64,000 bases of DNA from Ministeria vibrans ATCC 50519 (taxonomy: Eukaryota; Protista; Filasterea): the NCBI GenBank assembly GCA_943704425.1, contig CALSCP010000945.1:217165-281164 (forward strand), given 5' to 3'. Below, one piece after another: positions 29,690 through 36,911 of this stretch. Each line of letters opens with the position of its first letter. Positions within the stretch are counted from its first letter, which is position 1. The position numbers and the translations under genes were made by a program. Below the pieces are notes generated by a model that was not told the origin of the DNA, did no database searches, and worked only from the letters and a program-made list of their open reading frames with translations.

Positions 29690-32200
29690 ATGCCTTCGAT
29701 CAAGAGAGGCGTGCGAAACGGCACGCCCTTTGTGGTGGTGCCTGAAGGCAATTTTATTCCGGTGCCGTTGTACAAGCTGATCCACACTCTGGTCAACAAG
29801 GGACTGTCGGTACGGGCCACTCCGCGCGCCGTTTGCTGCTCACTCGTCGCCCATGGCGGTGTGTTTGTCTCTTTTTTTGTTGTGCGGGTGGGCGTGCAGG
29901 ACGACAAGGAGCGTCGGTTGTTTCTGGATTTTGCGCGTCGTCTCGAAAGTGTTTACCGGAACCGCTGGTACGACGAGTACAAGTCGCTAAAGCGGTCCTT
30001 CTCGCTCTTCTCCCCACACCTGGAGGTACGTTGATTGGTGTTGTCTGTTTGGGTTGCGTCAGGCCCGCATGGCTGCGTCCCTGATGCCCGTGGGCCGGGC
30101 CAACACGCCCCGCTTGGGTGGCGCCGTGTCCCAGCCGAACACACCGCAACTGCCGCTGTGCCGTTGGGCCGCTGCGGGTCCGTACACCCGGTGGCGATGG
30201 TGTGCTTTGGTGTGGAGCGCATGCGACACCATGCAAACCGTCTTCTTCTTTTCTGTGTTGTGTCTTGTGTTAATGTGTGTTTTCTGCCTTCTGCGCATCT
30301 CTCAGGGTCGCGACTTGTTGGACCTGAAGGATGCCACCATCGATGCCGAGGAGGATGCCTTTCTTGACAAGTTTCACCAAATGATGTTGCGCGGCAACTA
30401 CCTCATGCTATCGCAGTCAGAGTACGACATGGCCATGGAGGAAGGTACTCATTAATAATAAAGATGACGATTATTATGCTCCAATCATAATAATAATTTT
30501 TTGTACGATATTTATTTCGATAGATTACATGTTCAATGTACGAGCGACCGTCAAGTGGAACAAACTGGATTCATCTTTATTTTCTCGCTTTCTCGAGAGA
30601 CACGAAGGAGAGGTGCGCACTCATACCACACCCACTCACAACAACGTATTAGACAATAAAATAATATGTATTTTGTGCTTTTTTTTGGTTCTTTTGTAGT
30701 TGTCCGAGTTGGGCCCGGGAGGAGCAGCATCGATTCTGAAGCACTCGCTAATCTACCATCGGGGTGTTGGGTGTGATCGTGTGACGGCGCCCATGATGAT
30801 GGAGAAGATTGATATGATGTTCTATCGTGCGCAAGAGGCACTCTCGAGCATTGTACGTCTCGCTCTCTCACCCAGTTCCTATCTTTGTCTCTGTGTTTCT
30901 CATGGGGGTTCTTTTTCTTTTAGATGTTCTTTTGGCGAAAACGAGAGAGCCAGACGCCGGAAGAGCTTCGTCTTGCGGCGGAAGCGGCAGCCGCGGCGGA
31001 CGAGGGCCATGTGCAGGTGGTGGAGCGACGCAATGTGCGGTCGCTGTTGTCGCTGGGCAACCTGCTGCGACCGCTGCGCATGCAAGAGCCGACCTTCAAA
31101 CAGATTATCATTTTGTATCGGCCTGTGGAGCCTCTGATAACGCAGAAGAACGCGTCGCTGCTCAAGACGACGGGAGTGGTAAGCCATGCGGACCAGAACC
31201 GGCGACGCGTGGCGCGCCGGCCAATCTACATCAAGAGCTTTGTTGACGTGCCCATGGCCGACATGGAGATGGTGCTGCCCGAGAAGGAGATCCAAATGAA
31301 CCCCGTCGACCTCATTAAGCTTGTCGTTGCCCTACTCGGCGCCTTTATCGCCGTCTACGTCAAGTTGACGGGCGACATGGACGACTCGGAGCAGAATGAG
31401 AACGCCGCCTTTGCCACTCTTGCGCTCATGGTCTCGTATGTCGTCAAGCTGGTGCTGCAGTTTAACACTCAGAACCAGAAGTATAATCTCATGGTCACGC
31501 AGAGCATTTACAAGAAGAGCCTAGACAACCACGATGGCGTCATGCTCTATCTTGTCGACTCGGTCCTCGAACAGGAACTCAAAGTAACCCACACTTGCAC
31601 TATATGAGCAGGTATCTCACACACTTTCTCTCACCTTGTATTACTTGTTTCTCTATCACTTTGTTTCTCTATCACTTTGTTTCACTATCACTTTGTTCCT
31701 CTATCACTTTGTCTCTCTATCACTTTGTCTCTCTATCACTTGTTTCTCTCTCTCTGCATGTGTGTGCTAGGAGTCCCTTTTAGCATACTTCTTTTTGTGG
31801 CGTGAAGGACCCAAGACTATGGAGGAACTTGATGAGATTTGTGAGTCATTTCTACGCAGCGAGTGTGACGAAAAGGTCGATTTTGAGGTGAGTTTAGAGA
31901 TTGTGAGCGAGAGAAAGAAACAATAATTAAATTATTGTGAAGGGGAGAGAGGAGGGAGAAAGACACAAAACAATATTAATCAACAGAATGAATGTCTGAG
32001 ATGTTAAATGGGCGCTTATTTTGCGAATGTAGGTTGATGATGCACTTGAAAAGTTGCAGCGCGATGGGTTTGTCAAGTATGTGCACGGAAAAGTGCGGAG
32101 TGTGCCAATCACAATGGCCATTCAGCAGCTGGACACCATTTGGGCGGGAGTGCACACGACCAAGAGTGCCCCTTGTCCGTACTGTCTGCATTTGAAGTGA
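29690..32200 (+). CDS. DUF3754 / TMEM143-like membrane protein
   Basis: EPTFKQIIILYR, IKSFVDVPMADMEMVLPEK, two TM segments, QELKESLLAYFFL and VDFEVDDALEKL. Confidence 0.8.
31640..31750 (-). repeat. CAAAGTGATA(GA)n minisatellite (intronic)
   Basis: Tandem TCTATCACTTTGT units on the + strand. Confidence 0.85.
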
Positions 32201-32228: not shown

Positions 32229-32263
<35 letters not shown>

Positions 32264-32338: not shown

Positions 32339-35300
32339 TTAGTCCTTCTCAACCAACTCCATTTCGTGAGCCAACTGCTCAATGGTGAGGGGTGCAGGAG
32401 TGGGGTTGAGTGGGAGCAGTGCAGTGCCATTGGGCGTGACGGTGCCGTGGCGGGGCTCGCGCGGGCGCGGCGGAAGCACGTGAATCAGCTCAAGCAGATT
32501 TCGCATGCGAACCACGCGTGTGAACAAATGTATTTTCCTATGTGTGTAAGAAAGTGTGTTTGTGAGCTCTAGGGCAGCGGCATGGACAAACAGAAAACAG
32601 AGGAAGGTGTGTTGTGATCGTCTGTTTGTCGTGTATCCTTCTAACCTGGCTTTGGGTCCAAGAACACGCCAAATCTCCAAATTTCTGTGCCACTGAATCA
32701 CACTTAGCCCAAAGTCATGCACAGCTTCAATCTACAAACACAATATAAGACTAACAGAGAAAGGAAGAAAAAAATATAGAGGCAGAGAGAGGGAGAAAGA
32801 AAGAAAGAGAGAGAGAGAGAAAGAGAGAAACAAAGTGATACAGAGAGATACAAAGTGATAGAGAGAGAGGGAGAGAAACAAAGTGATAGAGAGAGAGAAA
32901 GAGAGAAAAAAACAGGTGATAGAAAACAGGTGATAGAAACAGGTGGTAGAGATAATCTTACAACTTGCCAATGCTTCCATAGTCCCATGTTGATATTTCT
33001 TTTTGTGCCATAGTGTTGCCACAGTTCCAGACAGCGCACTTCACTCTACATGCAATGCAACATGATAAGTATGAACTGCTGTGAATTGCCCTGTTTTATT
33101 GTGTCGACGTACAGTGCACTTTGCGACGCCCATGTGAAATTCAAAGCGTGGATCCGCAATTGCAGCCTGAATCATAAGTAGGAAGATATTAAGTGAGATA
33201 GGGGCTGAGTAAGCGAGCGACTGAATGACTGAGTTTTTTTCTTCTTTTCTTATGGGTGGTTTCTCATTGTTTTTCAAGCGTGTACCTCTTCAAAATCAAT
33301 CACTGCTGACAAATGTCCTGTTGAATTGAGCAGTACATTTTGCGCGTGCAAATCGCGATGCACTAAAACGCCCTCAAGTTTCTATCATGCGTTTCTATAT
33401 CAGTTTTCCATCTCTCGATAAAAATAACTAGAGTCGCCTTACCGGAACTGTTCCGTTTTTGATGAATGCCGTTGCAACTTTTCGCGCACTCTCAAATGCT
33501 CCAAATTTGGTTTCGTCAGACCACTGTTTCCAACGACCCATTAAGGTGTCAAGATCACCCTAAGCATACAGAAGAAGGTACTGTCCAGTTAGCATCACAC
33601 GAAACAAGAGAGCAGAAGTTGAGCACAGTACCTTTGGAAGAATATTCTCAGGATCAGAGCCAGTCATATTAATCCTAAATGAGTAGGGAGAGTGGTGAGT
33701 GAGTGACGCAAAGTAAAATAATAATAATTATAATTATTATTATTATTATTGTGTGTGCATTGTCTCAGCGCTTACGAGTGTAGTGCTAGCATAGCATCCA
33801 CTGCCATCTCAGACACGTGACATCGCGTCCGATCGTGTCGATCAACCCTATACAAAACACGATATGTTAATAATAATCATGTGTGGTTATTGAAATTTTT
33901 GTTTATTTCAAACCATTCTTTGTCGGAGTCTAACACTTCCAACAGAGCAAAAAAACTTTTGACTGATTCCAATCGCTCATCTTTTTTGCGCTGTCTCCTA
34001 ATTGATCAACATAAAATTAGTTGCTTTCGTTTCTTTTCATCCCTCTCATACATTATATAGCCATTTTTGTAGACTTTCGGAACGCGAATCACATTCGCAT
34101 TACGAACAATTTGCAGCGCTCTAAAAAAAAAAAAACAAAAGAAATACAGTGAGATTTGTTTTCGGGTTCATTTTTTTCGTGTTTTTTTTTGGCGCACTTC
34201 ATTTCGATTTCACCCATTGAGCGTTGAAGGAATCCCTCCCAGAGAGAGACATGGCCGTTCCAGATGCGTAGAATGACGCGCGGGGCGGGCGGGAATCCAC
34301 TGACACGCAAAAGAACCACTTCTTGCTGGTACGATCCTATATCCCCGCCAAAGAGGGTTAAGGTTGTGACTTTCGATTTTTCTTTCGTGTTCCTTTTTAC
34401 CAAGATTTTTCACCGCTGTGATTTGTGCTTTTGAGTGGCGAAAGAACCATTCGTGGATTTCTCGTGGGACATGAGAAAGAGGAAGATTGCGGTCATAATT
34501 ACCGGCACGAAGAACAAAGTCAGGAGCGGGATTGGGACGGATAATAGGATTGGGCGCGAGAGGGAGAGGAGCGTCGCTAGTGGTTGGGGAGTGGTGGTGG
34601 TTGGGAGTGAGCCAGGCGAGATGTTGTTGTGGTGGTGGTCGTAGCTGTGGTGGCGATGGTGGGGTGAAGTTGCTGTGCTGGGGGGCAGACAGGAGTGAAG
34701 GGACGGTGAGGAGAAGAAGAAGCGAGACCACGAGCAGCGCGAAGGGGCTCCTGTTGCCGGCTGGTGCGCTGGCCGAGGGGCTGCGCCGCATGCGCAGAAG
34801 CGGAAGCAGATACAGATCCACCAGAACCACAATCGCCACTATGGCATATTATTAATTGTTTGGAGTGTTTGTGTGAGTATATTGATGCTTGAGACTGGAT
34901 AATTATGTGTACCGAACGACTGGACGAAAGAAGAGTGCAACGGACCGTAAAGGGCACAAAATGTGGCAATGAGGAGCGTCAGTAGAACGAAAGCGGATTG
35001 AGGAAGCTCAAGCGACACAAATCGCTATGAAAAAAAAAACACACGATGATTCGTTTGGTTTGGTAGTTTGATTGACTTACCATTGTGACTCGAGCAAAAG
35101 TCCACGAACAAGAAAGGACAATGAGTGGAAGGGAAGCTAAACTCGCAAGGAGGTACGCTAAAGAGAGACGGGTCGAACAGGTTTAATTGATCATTATTAT
35201 TTGTAGGGTTGAGGGTATTATTAGACTAAGAGTTGGGGGTAAGAGTCTCCTGTATCATTAGGCGTAGAGATATTTGTCCTAGACTATACCGATTTTCATG

Positions 35301-36590
35301 AAGTGAATGATTCCGGTTTCTGAAGACATTAGAGTTGGAAGTTCGCTGTAAGGAATGCTTGGGCCAAACGAAAGCACACCCAACACACCAATCTAAAACG
35401 AAAAGCAACCCAACATATGAATGAGAAAGAATGAAAGAAAGAAAAAAAAACAAAGTGATACAGAGAGAGAACCAAAGTAAGAGAAGCAAAGTGAGAGAAG
35501 CAAAGTGATAGATAAAGAAACAAAGTGATAGAGACAAAGTGATAGATAAAGAAACAAAGTGATAGAATGGGAGGCGTACAGTGACATAGAAGAAGGCAAG
35601 AAGGGCAAGCGACGATTGGACGGAGCGGAAGAAGGTGGGCGCAAGGTCGCGTCGGAAGCACAGGAACATGTACTGGATTTGACTGCACACAGCAGGATCA
35701 AAAGAGAGAGAAAATGTGTGTGAGTGTGAGGAAAGGGTGCAGTCAATGGGCGTGAATCGGGAGTATTGTGTGGGTACGGTTGGACAGCATAAGTGAGCAC
35801 CAGAGTGGGCAGAACACTTGTGAGATTGTCGATGCGCCAGAGGGCAATGTCGTTCCAGGCATCTCTATTGGTAGGTGTGAGAGGGGGAGAGAGAAACGGG
35901 CGTGAGTGAGTGTGTGAAAGAGAGAAGCGAGCAAACCTGTTTTCAAATGCGAGGACGGTGAGAATGCCCAGGAAGGCGGCAAGCAGAACGAAGATGGTGT
36001 AGCAGGCGGGCAAGAGACTTCGCAAGAGTCCCGACGGTGGTCTGTAGGCAACAAAGGCGGTTGCGGCCGGGGTAAGGAGCAGACCGGTGATCATGATGGT
36101 GTGGGACTGACTGAGAGAGGCGCTGATTTCAACGAGCGTGTGAGTTTGGGCGGTCAGCATGGAAGGGGCTCACCTGGCGCTGTGCTCTCGAGCAATGTGG
36201 GGTGCCAGCTGACCAAAGAAGGTGATCGACGAGACGAGCAGGCTGAAGAGCGTCAGAAGCGCCGCCAGTTCGGTGGAGAAGCGAGCGCCTAAGGTAGCGG
36301 CACATCATGAGAATGATGCGGGTTTCCCAGTGGGCAGTGGCGTACCTTCGCGCGGCACAAGCACGCTATCGGTGCGTGATATACAGTAAGAAGACAGCCA
36401 GAAGTAGCCGAGGACCAAAAGCGGGCCTGTGGAGCAACGCAGCAGCCGGGATGAGGCAGACGGCGGTCTTGCATTGCGACATACCGCCAATCAGCCCAAC
36501 CTGGTCCATGATCCACGGCATGGACGCCGCCGCGTTCATGTGGAGACACCCCAACGTTACAAGCGTTGTGATCTCCGGCGATGCCGACAT
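32339..36590 (-). CDS. Fusion of an Aa_trans/SLC38-like multi-pass transporter to a C-terminal APH/choline-kinase-fold phosphotransferase
   Basis: Phase-consistent exons give SMPWIMDQVGLIGGPLLVL, TYAVQPQIQYMF, FYVTIGVLGVLSFG, LASLPLIVLSC and FVAIVVLVDLYLLP. A last TM and P-rich linker lead to EMKALQIVR...VPKVY, LALHS, LVHRDLHAQNVLL and AVIDFEEAAIADP. Junction intron 34839-34912. Confidence 0.72.
32820..32952 (+). repeat. CAAAGTGATA/CAGGTGATA(GA)n minisatellite (intronic)
   Basis: Direct observation. Confidence 0.8.
35445..35565 (+). repeat. CAAAGTGATA(GA)n minisatellite (intronic)
   Basis: Direct observation. Confidence 0.8.
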
Positions 36591-36719
36591 ACCGCCTCAG
36601 ATGATGTTGTGCGGTTGCACAAATGAAAACACAGATGAATGAAAAAAAGCTGATTATTTTTGATTTTTCAATTAGTTACGCTGATCAGAATAAATTTCCA
36701 AAAAGCAATTTAAAGAAAA

Positions 36720-36911
36720 ATGGCTGCGGCAGCACAACGAGCTGCTATGAAGCTGTTGCAAACAGCCAGTGGGCTTGTGCCGAAAGCGAGAATGGCGGCA
36801 GAGAGCACGATTGACCTGGCCAAGGCGGCCAAGGCCAAGGCAGCGCCCCACGTCCACTGGTTCATGCAGCACGCCCCCAAGGAGCTTGGGCCCCCTTCCC
36901 TCGCCAAGTGG
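36720..36911 (+). CDS. ATP5MG: Mitochondrial ATP synthase subunit g, exon 1
   Basis: ...HWFMQHAPKELGPPSLAKW, with a phase-0 donor at 36912. Colinear with subunit g (ELxPP motif) when joined to the exon at 40737. Confidence 0.85.

What the first reader, a model, noticed from the sequence alone, without database searches (positions are those of the whole stretch)
32339..36590. Hidden SLC38-like transporter fused to an APH/choline-kinase-fold phosphotransferase
Seen: a run of small minus-strand exons splices with consistent phases wherever I traced them. They give ~11 hydrophobic segments with Aa_trans/SLC38A10-like motifs. These continue via the 74-nt intron 34839-34912 (no stop codon, no intergenic spacer) into a P-rich linker and a kinase-like domain with intact HRDLHAQN (33337-33360) and IDFEE (33286-33300). 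Known: APH/choline kinases phosphorylate small molecules, and 11-TM Aa_trans carriers are N-in/C-out. Inference: a single-chain transport-plus-phosphorylation module or transceptor, possibly with a luminal or extracellular kinase. The loops look shortened, so the carrier may be degenerate. The ORF track does not show this gene.
Basis: partly seen in the sequence, partly recalled or inferred. Interest (0 to 1): 0.8.

Follow-up and report, generated by a model that had tools for sequence, protein, structure and literature searches.

The report
Carrier-like membrane protein fused to kinase
An intron-rich gene of an unidentified microbial eukaryote appears to encode one 816-residue protein that joins a very divergent 11-helix amino-acid-carrier-like membrane module to an APH-type small-molecule kinase domain. 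The kinase domain is predicted to lie outside the cytosol, the combination is unusual, and no transcript confirms it yet.

Summary
On the minus strand, 21 exons (36590..32339) join through 20 canonical GT-AG introns into one 2451-nt open frame of 816 codons. Twenty of the 21 exons have their best codon usage in the modelled frame.

- **Kinase half:** it is APH-type. The catalytic exon alone exceeds Pfam's APH cut-off (35.1 vs 23.2 bits). It is not a choline kinase or a protein kinase by score.
- **Carrier half:** no Pfam or NCBIfam model recognises it exon by exon. In a local profile comparison the joined N-half aligns end to end with Aa_trans (AAAP) carriers (P 4e-4 to 8e-4). It scores above 100 of 100 hydropathy-preserving shuffles, and other membrane proteins of the genome score much lower. 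The TM1 signature looks lost.
- **Topology:** 11 TM helices with a clean positive-inside pattern give N-in/C-out. The kinase is therefore extracytosolic, whether the protein is fused or starts at ATG 34791.
- **Fusion:** intron 9 splits TM10, and exon 10 carries TM10b, TM11, the linker and kinase strand β1 in one frame. Without splicing the carrier would stop at about 9 helices, 48 nt before the next ATG.
- **Missing:** I found no transcript, orthologue or paralogue.

The joined protein was not sent to any database or structure tool. Verdict: probably a real fusion, a new variant of the transporter-plus-kinase kind, with unknown function.

The parts
32339..36590 (-). Whole coding region of the 21-exon model (816 codons plus stop TAA at 32339-32341; start ATG at 36588-36590)
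   Evidence: a continuous 2451-nt frame across 20 GT..AG introns; codon usage prefers the model frame in 20 of 21 exons.
36485..36590 (-). Exon 1 (residues 1-35): short cytosolic N-terminus, TM1-like interrupted segment, start of TM2
36346..36426 (-). Exon 2 (TM2 and the R-rich inside loop)
36174..36288 (-). Exon 3 (TM3)
35937..36122 (-). Exon 4 (TM4 and TM5); single copy in the genome
35778..35864 (-). Exon 5 (outside loop with sequon NLT, first part of TM6)
35580..35682 (-). Exon 6 (second part of TM6, inside loop, start of TM7); best-aligned region against Aa_trans carriers
35290..35392 (-). Exon 7 (TM7 with a Y..IG..G..SFG pattern, outside loop)
35081..35157 (-). Exon 8 (TM8)
34913..35024 (-). 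Exon 9 (TM9 and the first four residues of TM10)
34839..34912 (-). Intron 9, the junction intron: 74 nt, GT..AG, 32% GC, TTAAT about 15 nt before the acceptor. If retained, the frame stops at TAG 34839-34841.
34401..34838 (-). Exon 10, the junction exon, one frame of 146 codons. It carries the rest of TM10, the R-rich inside loop with ATG 34791, TM11 (about 34687-34743), a Pro-rich linker (about 34513-34683, 17 Pro in 57 residues, sequon NFT) and the first strand of the kinase N-lobe.
   Evidence: the 47 nt upstream of ATG 34791 score +7.6 in the model frame against -3.8 and -2.3. TM10, loop and TM11 align with the family's TM10, loop and TM11.
34198..34336 (-). Exon 11: glycine-loop equivalent and the strand with ILRIW (putative ATP-anchoring position), start of helix C
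   Evidence: motif reading only. No family model hits this exon.
34052..34120 (-). Exon 12 (N-lobe)
33914..33997 (-). Exon 13 (N-lobe and hinge)
33776..33847 (-). Exon 14 (helix with the ...LALHS motif typical of APH enzymes)
   Evidence: motif reading
33632..33674 (-). Exon 15 (14 codons, sequon NMT)
33443..33559 (-). Exon 16 (helical insert before the catalytic loop; APH model positions from about 115)
   Evidence: the six-frame PF01636 match at G000:C945:250447-250698, which is window 33283-33534, scores 36.5 bits over model positions 115-197.
33286..33381 (-). Exon 17: catalytic loop HRDLHAQN (33337-33360) and metal-binding IDFEE (33286-33300)
   Evidence: PF01636 APH E 1.5e-8, 35.1 bits (cut-off 23.2), model positions 167-195.
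33113..33166 (-). Exon 18 (AAIADP..E.. segment that follows the DFE motif in APH enzymes)
   Evidence: motif reading
32962..33045 (-). Exon 19 (C-lobe helices). It is the only exon whose model frame is not the best by codon usage (2.5 vs 4.7).
32646..32731 (-). Exon 20 (C-lobe helices)
32339..32537 (-). Exon 21 (last C-lobe helix, Pro-rich tail of about 45 residues with sequon NGT, stop)

Best explanation
This is one gene that makes one membrane protein. Residues 1-375 are a compact, highly divergent relative of the AAAP/Aa_trans amino-acid carriers. It has 11 TM helices, with the N-terminus in the cytosol and the C-terminus on the far side of the membrane. TM11 leads through a 57-residue Pro-rich, probably glycosylated stalk into an APH-fold small-molecule kinase domain of about 340 residues. 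That domain therefore sits in a lumen (secretory pathway or vacuole) or outside the cell, followed by a Pro-rich tail. Shown: the exon chain, the APH identity of the catalytic core, the 11-TM positive-inside pattern and the distant but specific Aa_trans likeness. Inferred: the kinase is catalytically competent, because its catalytic loop, Asn and metal-binding Asp are intact. It phosphorylates a small solute or a glycan on the trans side of the membrane. The carrier-like module holds it there and may deliver or sense the substrate. The apparent loss of the carrier's TM1 signature makes a scaffold or sensor role at least as likely as classical transport.
For: Gene model: one 2451-nt frame across 20 GT..AG introns, and codon usage prefers the model frame in 20 of 21 exons.

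Fusion:
- Intron 9 cuts TM10 after four residues.
- The 15 codons between the acceptor and ATG 34791 complete TM10 and score as coding in frame (+7.6).
- Exon 10 has no stop and also carries TM11, the linker and kinase strand β1. The exon 10/11 junction splits the nucleotide-loop region.
- Intron retention would end the carrier at TAG 34839-34841, only 48 nt before that ATG.
- TM10, the R-rich loop and TM11 align with the same elements of Aa_trans carriers.

Kinase:
- PF01636 scores 35.1 bits on exon 17 alone and 36.5 bits over model positions 115-197 in six frames.
- The nearest NCBIfam catalytic loops are mostly small-molecule kinases: homoserine, Kdo and thiamine kinases, CotS and Mph, all weak. 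A PASTA Ser/Thr kinase and two lanthionine synthetase models scored in the same weak range.

Carrier:
- hhalign of the N-half against an 8-sequence Aa_trans profile gives a local score of 34.3 (P 8e-4, 218 collinear columns) and a global alignment of 350 columns (P 4e-4).
- 100 block-shuffled decoys gave mean 16.1, sd 2.6, max 24.6.
- Eight natural MFS/APC proteins of the same genome scored 15.8-22.9.
- The N-half scored 13.6 against an MFS profile.

Topology:
- K+R counts are 3, 2, 3, 2, 4 in the alternate 'inside' loops and 1, 2, 1, 0 in the 'outside' loops.
- This matches the 11-TM N-in/C-out layout of SNAT2 and SLC38A9 (PMC4927162; bioRxiv 10.1101/288233).
- The C-terminal part has 5 N-x-S/T sequons against 1.9 expected, and the sequon NLT lies in an outside loop.
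Against: - There is no transcript evidence. Exon 10 and exon 4 were not found in public metagenome or transcriptome contigs, even though a near-identical organism has transcript-like contigs there.
- Exon 10 has no relative among 1.84 billion representative proteins, and exons 4, 10, 11 and 16 have no paralogue in the genome. Conservation of the fusion therefore cannot be shown.
- No curated family model recognises any N-half exon.
- A small HMM built from five Aa_trans sequences gave no score above shuffles.
- Only about a third of the APH model is matched. The N-lobe assignment rests on motif reading, and a small APH profile aligned only the catalytic region.
- The inside loop plus TM11, read from Met340, looks like a signal peptide or signal anchor, so an internal-start isoform is plausible.
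- An ATP-dependent APH enzyme outside the cytosol is unusual.
Confidence: 0.55

Rival explanations
1. There are two products rather than one. A kinase-only protein starts at ATG 34791 (Met340) from an internal promoter or an alternative transcript and uses the inside loop plus TM11 as its signal peptide or signal anchor. The upstream exons make a separate, truncated carrier-like protein, or the fused form is a minor isoform.
For: From Met340 the sequence reads like a classic secretion signal: a basic n-region (M-R-R, N-R-S-P), a 19-residue hydrophobic core (mean hydropathy 2.46) and a small-residue end. Retaining intron 9 gives a stop exactly at the acceptor. No junction-spanning transcript could be found. 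The genome is compact: the divergent neighbour's ATG lies only 129 nt from this gene's ATG.
Against: Only 48 nt would separate that stop from the ATG. Those 48 nt complete a TM helix begun in exon 9 and score as coding in frame. The carrier would lose TM10b and TM11, although the LeuT-type core needs 10 helices (bioRxiv 10.1101/288233). TM10, loop and TM11 align with the family's own TM10, loop and TM11. Intron 9 has the size, GT..AG ends, low GC and branch-like TTAAT of the gene's other introns.
Confidence: 0.2
2. This is the reader's first reading: a cytosolic kinase coupled to uptake. The carrier brings a solute into the cytosol and the attached kinase phosphorylates it at once (trapping by group translocation), or the protein signals as a transceptor.
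For: It is the mechanistically simplest use of ATP. Transporter-kinase single chains exist, for example CbrA (PMC13022988). The count of 11 helices depends on two weakly hydrophobic segments, TM1 and TM6.
Against: The loop charge pattern does not depend on TM1. It puts the loop before TM11 inside (4 Arg) and so puts the domain after TM11 outside. The AAAP family layout is C-out (PMC4927162; bioRxiv 10.1101/288233). Sequons are enriched in the C-terminal part, and the stalk is Pro/Ser/Thr-rich.
Confidence: 0.1
3. The gene is not functional as modelled. It could be a decaying gene or a chance chain of open exons, or a polytopic anchor whose likeness to Aa_trans carriers comes only from TM composition.
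For: There are no relatives or paralogues. No family model hits the N-half. The TM1 signature residues of the family are not kept (low-confidence columns).
Against: 816 codons are free of stops, with 20 canonical introns and the correct codon-usage frame in 20 of 21 exons. The positive-inside pattern is clean. The catalytic motifs are intact. The hhalign score lies 7 sd above shuffles that keep the hydropathy pattern and well above real TM proteins of the same genome.
Confidence: 0.07

Closest known systems
AAAP / Aa_trans carriers (Pfam PF01490; SLC32, SLC36, SLC38, fungal AVT, plant AUX/LAX), e.g. SLC38A9 and SNAT2
   Same: Both have 11 TM helices with N-in/C-out topology. The alignment to a family profile is collinear from end to end, best over TM1b-TM7. 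The TM6 pattern (V-L-P-x5-Y-x2-Q) and the TM7 pattern (Y..IG..G..SFG) are shared, and an R-rich loop precedes TM11 (PMC4927162; bioRxiv 10.1101/288233).
   Different: No curated model recognises it exon by exon. It has no paralogue among this genome's own Aa_trans genes. The N..N...GxG signature of TM1, including the position of the proposed Na+-site Asn of SNAT2, appears lost. It has almost no N-terminal cytosolic domain. No known member that I am aware of carries a C-terminal enzyme domain (my knowledge, not surveyed here).
APH family (Pfam PF01636): aminoglycoside and macrolide phosphotransferases, type II homoserine kinase, thiamine kinase, CotS and similar
   Same: It shares the catalytic loop H-x-D-x4-N, the metal-binding D-F-E followed by A-x-x-A-D-P, a long helical insert between hinge and catalytic loop, and an L-R strand in the N-lobe. 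The score is above the family cut-off.
   Different: It has HRD rather than HGD, so pairwise searches also pick up protein kinases (EGFR E 1.9e-4; CK2-like paralogue P 1e-5). Only model positions 115-197 of 239 are matched. It is membrane-tethered and predicted to be extracytosolic, whereas characterised APH enzymes are soluble and cytosolic (my knowledge).
CbrA-type bacterial transceptors (SLC5-like transporter fused to a histidine kinase)
   Same: A LeuT-fold transporter-like module and a kinase lie in one polypeptide, which the paper itself describes as rare (PMC13022988).
   Different: CbrA is bacterial, its kinase is a cytosolic histidine kinase of a two-component system, and its carrier belongs to the SSS family. 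Here the carrier is AAAP-like, the kinase is an APH-fold small-molecule kinase, and it is predicted on the trans side.
TRPM6/TRPM7 channel-kinases and ammonium-transporter/histidine-kinase fusions
   Same: A transport protein is fused to a kinase domain (my knowledge).
   Different: The membrane folds and kinase folds differ, and those kinases are cytosolic.
Secretory-pathway kinases (FAM20 family, POMK and others)
   Same: A kinase-fold domain sits in the lumen of the secretory pathway or outside the cell, tethered by a membrane segment. Some phosphorylate sugars rather than proteins (review PMC13170776; POMK and FAM20B from my knowledge).
   Different: Those are single-pass or secreted proteins with protein-kinase-like folds of other families. 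None is attached to a polytopic carrier, and none is an APH-family member as far as I know.

Membership tests
Aa_trans / AAAP (PF01490) | Match to the curated family model above its gathering score (25.6 bits) | tested here: inconclusive
   Exon by exon there was no hit at E up to 10. The six-frame PF01490 search of the genome finds other Aa_trans genes exon-wise but nothing at this locus. The joined 375-residue module could not be scanned because it has no reference. The exons are only 25-61 residues long.
Aa_trans / AAAP (PF01490) | Profile-level, collinear similarity to family members beyond TM composition | tested here: met
   Local script, hhalign against 8 Aa_trans sequences: score 34.3, P 8e-4, 218 columns. 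Global alignment: 350 columns, P 4e-4. 100 block shuffles reached at most 24.6. Natural TM proteins scored 15.8-22.9. The MFS profile gave 13.6. Caveats: the profile is small, and hmmsearch with a 5-sequence HMM was not significant.
Aa_trans / AAAP (PF01490) | 11 TM helices, N-terminus cytosolic, C-terminus extracytosolic | tested here: met
   Hydropathy and the positive-inside count (14 K+R inside, 4 outside). Family layout from PMC4927162 and bioRxiv 10.1101/288233. No dedicated topology predictor was available.
Aa_trans / AAAP (PF01490) | TM1 signature (N..N...GxG before L-P-x-A), including the Asn proposed as Na+ site in SNAT2 | tested here: not met
   These columns are invariant in the 5-sequence family alignment (N105, N108, G112, G114). 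In the global alignment they face P, T, T and G, with a 6-residue insertion. Alignment confidence is low there.
Aa_trans / AAAP (PF01490) | Solute transport activity | not testable with these tools
   Needs expression and uptake assays.
APH (PF01636) | Match to the curated model above its gathering score (23.2 bits) | tested here: met
   Exon 17 alone: 35.1 bits, E 1.5e-8. Six-frame match across exons 16-17: 36.5 bits.
APH (PF01636) | Catalytic loop H-x-D-x4-N and metal-binding Asp of D-F/W-E/G | tested here: met
   HRDLHAQN at 33360-33337 and IDFEE at 33300-33286, aligned to model positions 167-195.
APH (PF01636) | Complete bilobal domain, including the ATP-anchoring basic residue of strand β3 and the helix-C Glu | tested here: inconclusive
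   Motif reading finds ILRIW and a following E-rich helix in exons 11-12. No model hits exons 10-14, and a small APH profile aligned only the catalytic region.
Choline/ethanolamine kinase (PF01633) | Match above the gathering score (29 bits) | tested here: not met
   14.6 bits, E 0.02 on exon 17.
Eukaryotic protein kinase (PF00069 / PF07714) | Match above the gathering score; DFG, activation loop and APE after the catalytic loop | tested here: not met
   16.8 and 16.6 bits against cut-offs of 31.7 and 23.1. The sequence after DFE is A-A-I-A-D-P, the APH pattern, with no APE segment. About 85 residues lie between hinge and HRD, the APH spacing (reading).
Transceptor / transporter-kinase single chains (e.g. 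CbrA) | Transporter-like module and kinase encoded in one translated chain | tested here: inconclusive
   DNA logic favours one chain. No transcript or protein evidence exists.

The most novel reading that the evidence does not exclude
This is a eukaryotic single-chain 'vectorial phosphorylation' machine. An AAAP-type carrier moves a solute across a membrane and the covalently attached APH-fold kinase phosphorylates it on the trans (luminal or extracellular) side. The product is trapped or tagged there. This would be a eukaryotic, ATP-driven counterpart of bacterial group translocation, running in the opposite direction.
Probability: 0.08. Interest if true: 0.85.

Novelty: new variant of a known kind. 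Interest (0 to 1): 0.5.

Why it matters
Both halves belong to well-known superfamilies, but I know of no described protein that joins an AAAP-type carrier to an APH-fold kinase. A full-text search for the two Pfam accessions together found no paper. If the chain is real, two things follow. First, it adds a eukaryotic, non-histidine-kinase example to the very short list of transporter-kinase single chains such as CbrA and the TRPM6/7 channel-kinases. Second, it would place an APH-type small-molecule kinase outside the cytosol, where only other kinase families such as FAM20 and POMK are known to work. That would give a tractable handle on luminal small-molecule or glycan phosphorylation in protists. 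The limits are serious. It is a single-copy orphan in one unidentified organism, with no transcript, orthologue or structure, so its weight at present is that of a well-supported gene model.

Tried and rejected
1. Pfam and NCBIfam on every exon of 20 residues or more, and on the one stop-free two-exon stretch (35780-36121). Only exon 17 hits anything meaningful.
2. Six-frame PF01490 search of the genome: nothing at this locus.
3. HMMER search of exon 10 against 1.84 billion representative proteins: 0 hits. This was the session's only such job. Exon 10 was chosen because it spans the junction, but it is mostly TM and low-complexity linker, so the blank says little about the kinase core.
5. Own-genome searches with exons 4, 10, 11 and 16: only the locus itself.
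6. PDB sequence searches. Exon 17 gives only generic kinase catalytic loops, the best being EGFR at E 1.9e-4. The exon 4-5 stretch gives nothing.
7. Pairwise phmmer of the joined halves against this genome's Aa_trans and APH paralogues: not significant.
8. A 5-sequence Aa_trans HMM: not above shuffles.
9. Two word-index protein searches to enlarge the Aa_trans profile returned only 4 and 7 proteins.
10. ESM Atlas look-up of the exon 4-5 stretch: scores of 0.84 with unrelated clusters, no information.
11. A small APH profile and single paralogues aligned only the catalytic loop.
12. GC3 shows a 5'-to-3' decline that begins inside the carrier half, at exon 7, not at the junction. It gives no sign of two compositional units.
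It is not human-like: the genome is 29.7 Mb with 50-230-nt introns.

Rejected readings: choline kinase membership and protein kinase membership, both by score.

Left out: every search, family scan, topology prediction or structure prediction of the joined 816-residue model in the database and structure tools, because a spliced model has no reference.

Full report
**What is in the sequence.** I read the minus strand from 36590 to 32339 and chose splice sites once, by eye, at GT..AG pairs. The result is 21 exons whose joined length is 2451 nt. They read open from ATG 36590 to TAA 32341-32339, which is 816 codons. An in-frame TGA lies 9 nt upstream of the ATG. All 20 introns are GT..AG and 51-230 nt long, and from intron 6 onward they are clearly AT-richer than the exons beside them.

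As an independent check I trained a codon-usage log-likelihood on 14 long ORFs from other contigs of the same genome. The modelled frame is the best of three in 20 of 21 exons (chance about 4e-9). The totals are +205 against -121 and -177, and introns show no consistent frame. Every coordinate in the finding is correct: intron 34839-34912, HRDLHAQN at 33360-33337, IDFEE at 33300-33286 and ATG 34791. The ORF list shows only fragments, so the gene is indeed hidden from an ORF track.

**Setting.** The window is contig C945 of a 29.7-Mb, 2860-contig eukaryotic assembly. The gene sits tightly between its neighbours. A convergent plus-strand DUF3754 gene has a probable last exon ending near 32200, about 140 nt from this gene's stop. 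A (TG)14 microsatellite lies between them. Introns 6 and 19 carry the CAAAGTGATA minisatellite that another note (s1-764643) describes.

**The C-terminal half.** Exon 17 is only 32 residues long, yet it scores 35.1 bits (E 1.5e-8) on Pfam APH PF01636, whose cut-off is 23.2. The alternatives fall below their cut-offs: Pkinase 16.8, PK_Tyr_Ser-Thr 16.6 and Choline_kinase 14.6 bits. A six-frame family search of the genome finds the same place across exons 16-17, with 36.5 bits over model positions 115-197.

The nearest NCBIfam catalytic loops are mostly those of small-molecule kinases: type II homoserine kinase, Kdo kinase, thiamine kinase, CotS and Mph. All are weak, and a PASTA Ser/Thr kinase and two lanthionine synthetase models scored in the same weak range. 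Because the loop reads HRD rather than HGD, pairwise searches also find protein kinases: EGFR at E 1.9e-4 in the PDB and a CK2-like paralogue at P 1e-5.

What follows the DFE is the APH pattern (A-A-I-A-D-P...E-F), with no activation loop or APE. About 85 residues separate the hinge from HRD, which is the APH spacing (reading). The N-lobe assignment rests on motif reading only: a strand ending ...NLG|SYQQEVVLLRV, then ILRIW, then an E-rich helix. No model hits exons 10-14, and small local APH profiles aligned only the catalytic region. I therefore file the domain as an APH-family member with an intact catalytic core and an unverified N-lobe. It is not a choline kinase.

**The N-terminal half.** Curated models do not recognise it. 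There is no Pfam or NCBIfam hit on any exon, nor on the single stop-free two-exon stretch. There is no PF01490 candidate at this locus, although other Aa_trans genes of the genome are found exon by exon. There is no PDB sequence match.

The joined model has no reference, so I did not send it to any database, family or structure tool. That step is left out.

- A 5-sequence HMM gave nothing above shuffles.
- hhalign gave a score of 28.4 (P 0.0065) with five sequences.
- With eight sequences it gave 34.3 (P 8e-4) over 218 collinear columns, from TM1b to the TM7-8 loop.
- In global mode, 350 columns aligned from end to end (P 4e-4).

The controls were as follows.

| Control | hhalign score |
|---|---|
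| N-half against the 8-sequence Aa_trans profile | 34.3 |
| 100 shuffles within 12-residue blocks (hydropathy pattern kept) | mean 16.1, sd 2.6, max 24.6 |
| Reversed N-half | 20.8 |
| Eight real MFS/APC membrane proteins of this genome against the same profile | 15.8-22.9 |
| N-half against an MFS profile | 13.6 (P 0.55) |

The best-matching stretch includes the family's TM6 and TM7 patterns. I conclude that the module is a specific but very distant relative of AAAP carriers. It cannot be placed in SLC38, let alone SLC38A10. In the global alignment the invariant TM1 columns of the family (N, N, G-x-G) face other residues and a 6-residue insertion (low confidence).

**Topology.** Hydropathy gives nine strong helices plus the two interrupted ones, TM1 and TM6. 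Lys+Arg counts alternate cleanly: 3, 2, 3, 2, 4 in the loops after TM2, 4, 6, 8 and 10, against 1, 2, 1, 0 in the others. That gives N-in and C-out, the layout reported for SNAT2 and seen in the SLC38A9 crystal structure (PMC4927162; bioRxiv 10.1101/288233). The domain after TM11 is therefore luminal or extracellular. Weak supporting signs are a 57-residue stalk with 17 prolines and an NFT sequon right after TM11, five sequons in the C-terminal part against 1.9 expected, and an NLT in an outside loop. This conclusion does not depend on the fusion. If translation began at Met340, the inside loop plus TM11 would act as a signal peptide or anchor and would still send the kinase domain out of the cytosol.

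**One chain or two?** The DNA favours one chain.

- Intron 9 cuts TM10 after its first four residues. The 15 codons between the acceptor and ATG 34791 finish that helix and score as coding in frame (+7.6 against -3.8 and -2.3).
- Exon 10 is one 146-codon frame that holds TM10b, the R-rich loop, TM11, the stalk and the first kinase strand. The exon 10/11 junction falls inside the nucleotide-loop region.
- Without splicing the carrier would end at TAG 34839-34841 with about nine helices, 48 nt before the next ATG. That leaves too little room for a 3' end, a promoter and a leader, even in this compact genome.
- TM10, loop and TM11 align with the family's own last two helices.
- Intron 9 looks like its neighbours in length, GC content and branch-like TTAAT.
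- The GC3 decline begins at exon 7, not at the junction.

What is missing is any direct evidence. Exon 10 has no relative among 1.84 billion representative proteins. Exons 10 and 4 are absent from the metagenome/transcriptome contigs, even though a 99.7%-identical fragment of another gene of this genome is present in JGI sample 3300017493. There are no paralogues. I put the fused protein as the main product at about 0.75. The whole best explanation, including the extracytosolic placement and the domain identities, stands at about 0.55.

**How it most likely works.**

- *Shown:* the gene model, the APH catalytic core, the 11-TM positive-inside pattern and the distant AAAP likeness.
- *Inferred from family knowledge:* the APH domain transfers phosphate from ATP to a hydroxyl of a small molecule or sugar, and the AAAP-like module forms a LeuT-type bundle.
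- *Inferred from topology:* the kinase acts in a lumen or at the cell surface.

My preferred reading is a membrane-tethered, trans-side small-molecule or glycan kinase. Its carrier-derived module holds it at the membrane and may deliver or sense the substrate. With the TM1 signature apparently gone, a scaffold or sensor role is at least as likely as true transport. The rivals are two products through an internal start (0.2), a cytosolic kinase with uptake-coupled trapping or transceptor signalling (0.1), and a non-functional or composition-driven artefact (0.07).

**Comparison with what is known, and novelty.** The protein works most like the rare transporter-kinase single chains. These include CbrA, an SLC5-like module joined to a histidine kinase (PMC13022988), and, from my own knowledge, the TRPM6/7 channel-kinases and Amt-histidine-kinase fusions. 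By location it resembles the secretory-pathway kinases (review PMC13170776). It differs from all of them in both folds and in joining a polytopic carrier to a trans-side APH domain. A full-text search for the two Pfam accessions together found no paper. I could not survey domain architectures in protein databases, so absence elsewhere is not shown. I rate it a new variant of a known kind, with interest 0.5. It is a well-supported and unusual gene model, but an orphan without transcript, orthologue, structure or function. The earlier notes of this scan touch only the neighbours and the intronic repeats, and none reported this gene on other DNA.

Noticed in passing
window 36591-36719: Only 129 nt separate this gene's ATG (36590, minus strand) from the ATG of a divergent plus-strand ORF at 36720. 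The promoter region is therefore very short and bidirectional. Pfam gave no hit on the 64-residue ORF.
   Followed up: partly
window 30924-32200 (+ strand): A convergent neighbour encodes a DUF3754 (PF12576) protein (E 4.7e-30 on the first exon). Its probable last exon ends near 32200, about 140 nt from this gene's stop, so the 3' ends must nearly touch or overlap. A (TG)14.5 microsatellite lies between them at 32232-32260.
   Followed up: partly
window 35465-35567 (intron 6), 32754-32950 (intron 19), 31645-31749 (intron of the DUF3754 gene): The same minisatellite family (core CAAAGTGATA, with AG-rich spacers) sits in introns of two neighbouring genes. The unit lies in opposite genomic orientations, so it reads the same way relative to each gene's sense strand.
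   Followed up: partly
L016 (JGI 3300017493, Ga0186467_1015184) and L010:1213-2721: A 1098-nt public contig encodes a 344-residue fragment that differs by one residue from an intronless Aa_trans gene of this genome. The sample looks like a transcriptome of the same or a near-identical organism. It could be mined for reads of the gene studied here.
   Followed up: partly
window 32339-36590: Third-position GC falls from 0.6-0.8 in exons 1-6 to 0.33-0.46 in exons 12-20, then returns to 0.67 in the last exon. Intron GC follows the same trend (0.5-0.6 down to 0.23-0.45). I have no explanation for this within-gene compositional gradient.
   Followed up: no
L001, L002, L003, L005, L008 (other contigs of G000): The genome holds a varied set of APH-superfamily genes: two ACAD10/11-like genes, a hydroxylysine-kinase-like gene, a DUF1679/CHK-like gene and an ABC1/ADCK-like gene. 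None is close to the kinase half studied here.
   Followed up: partly
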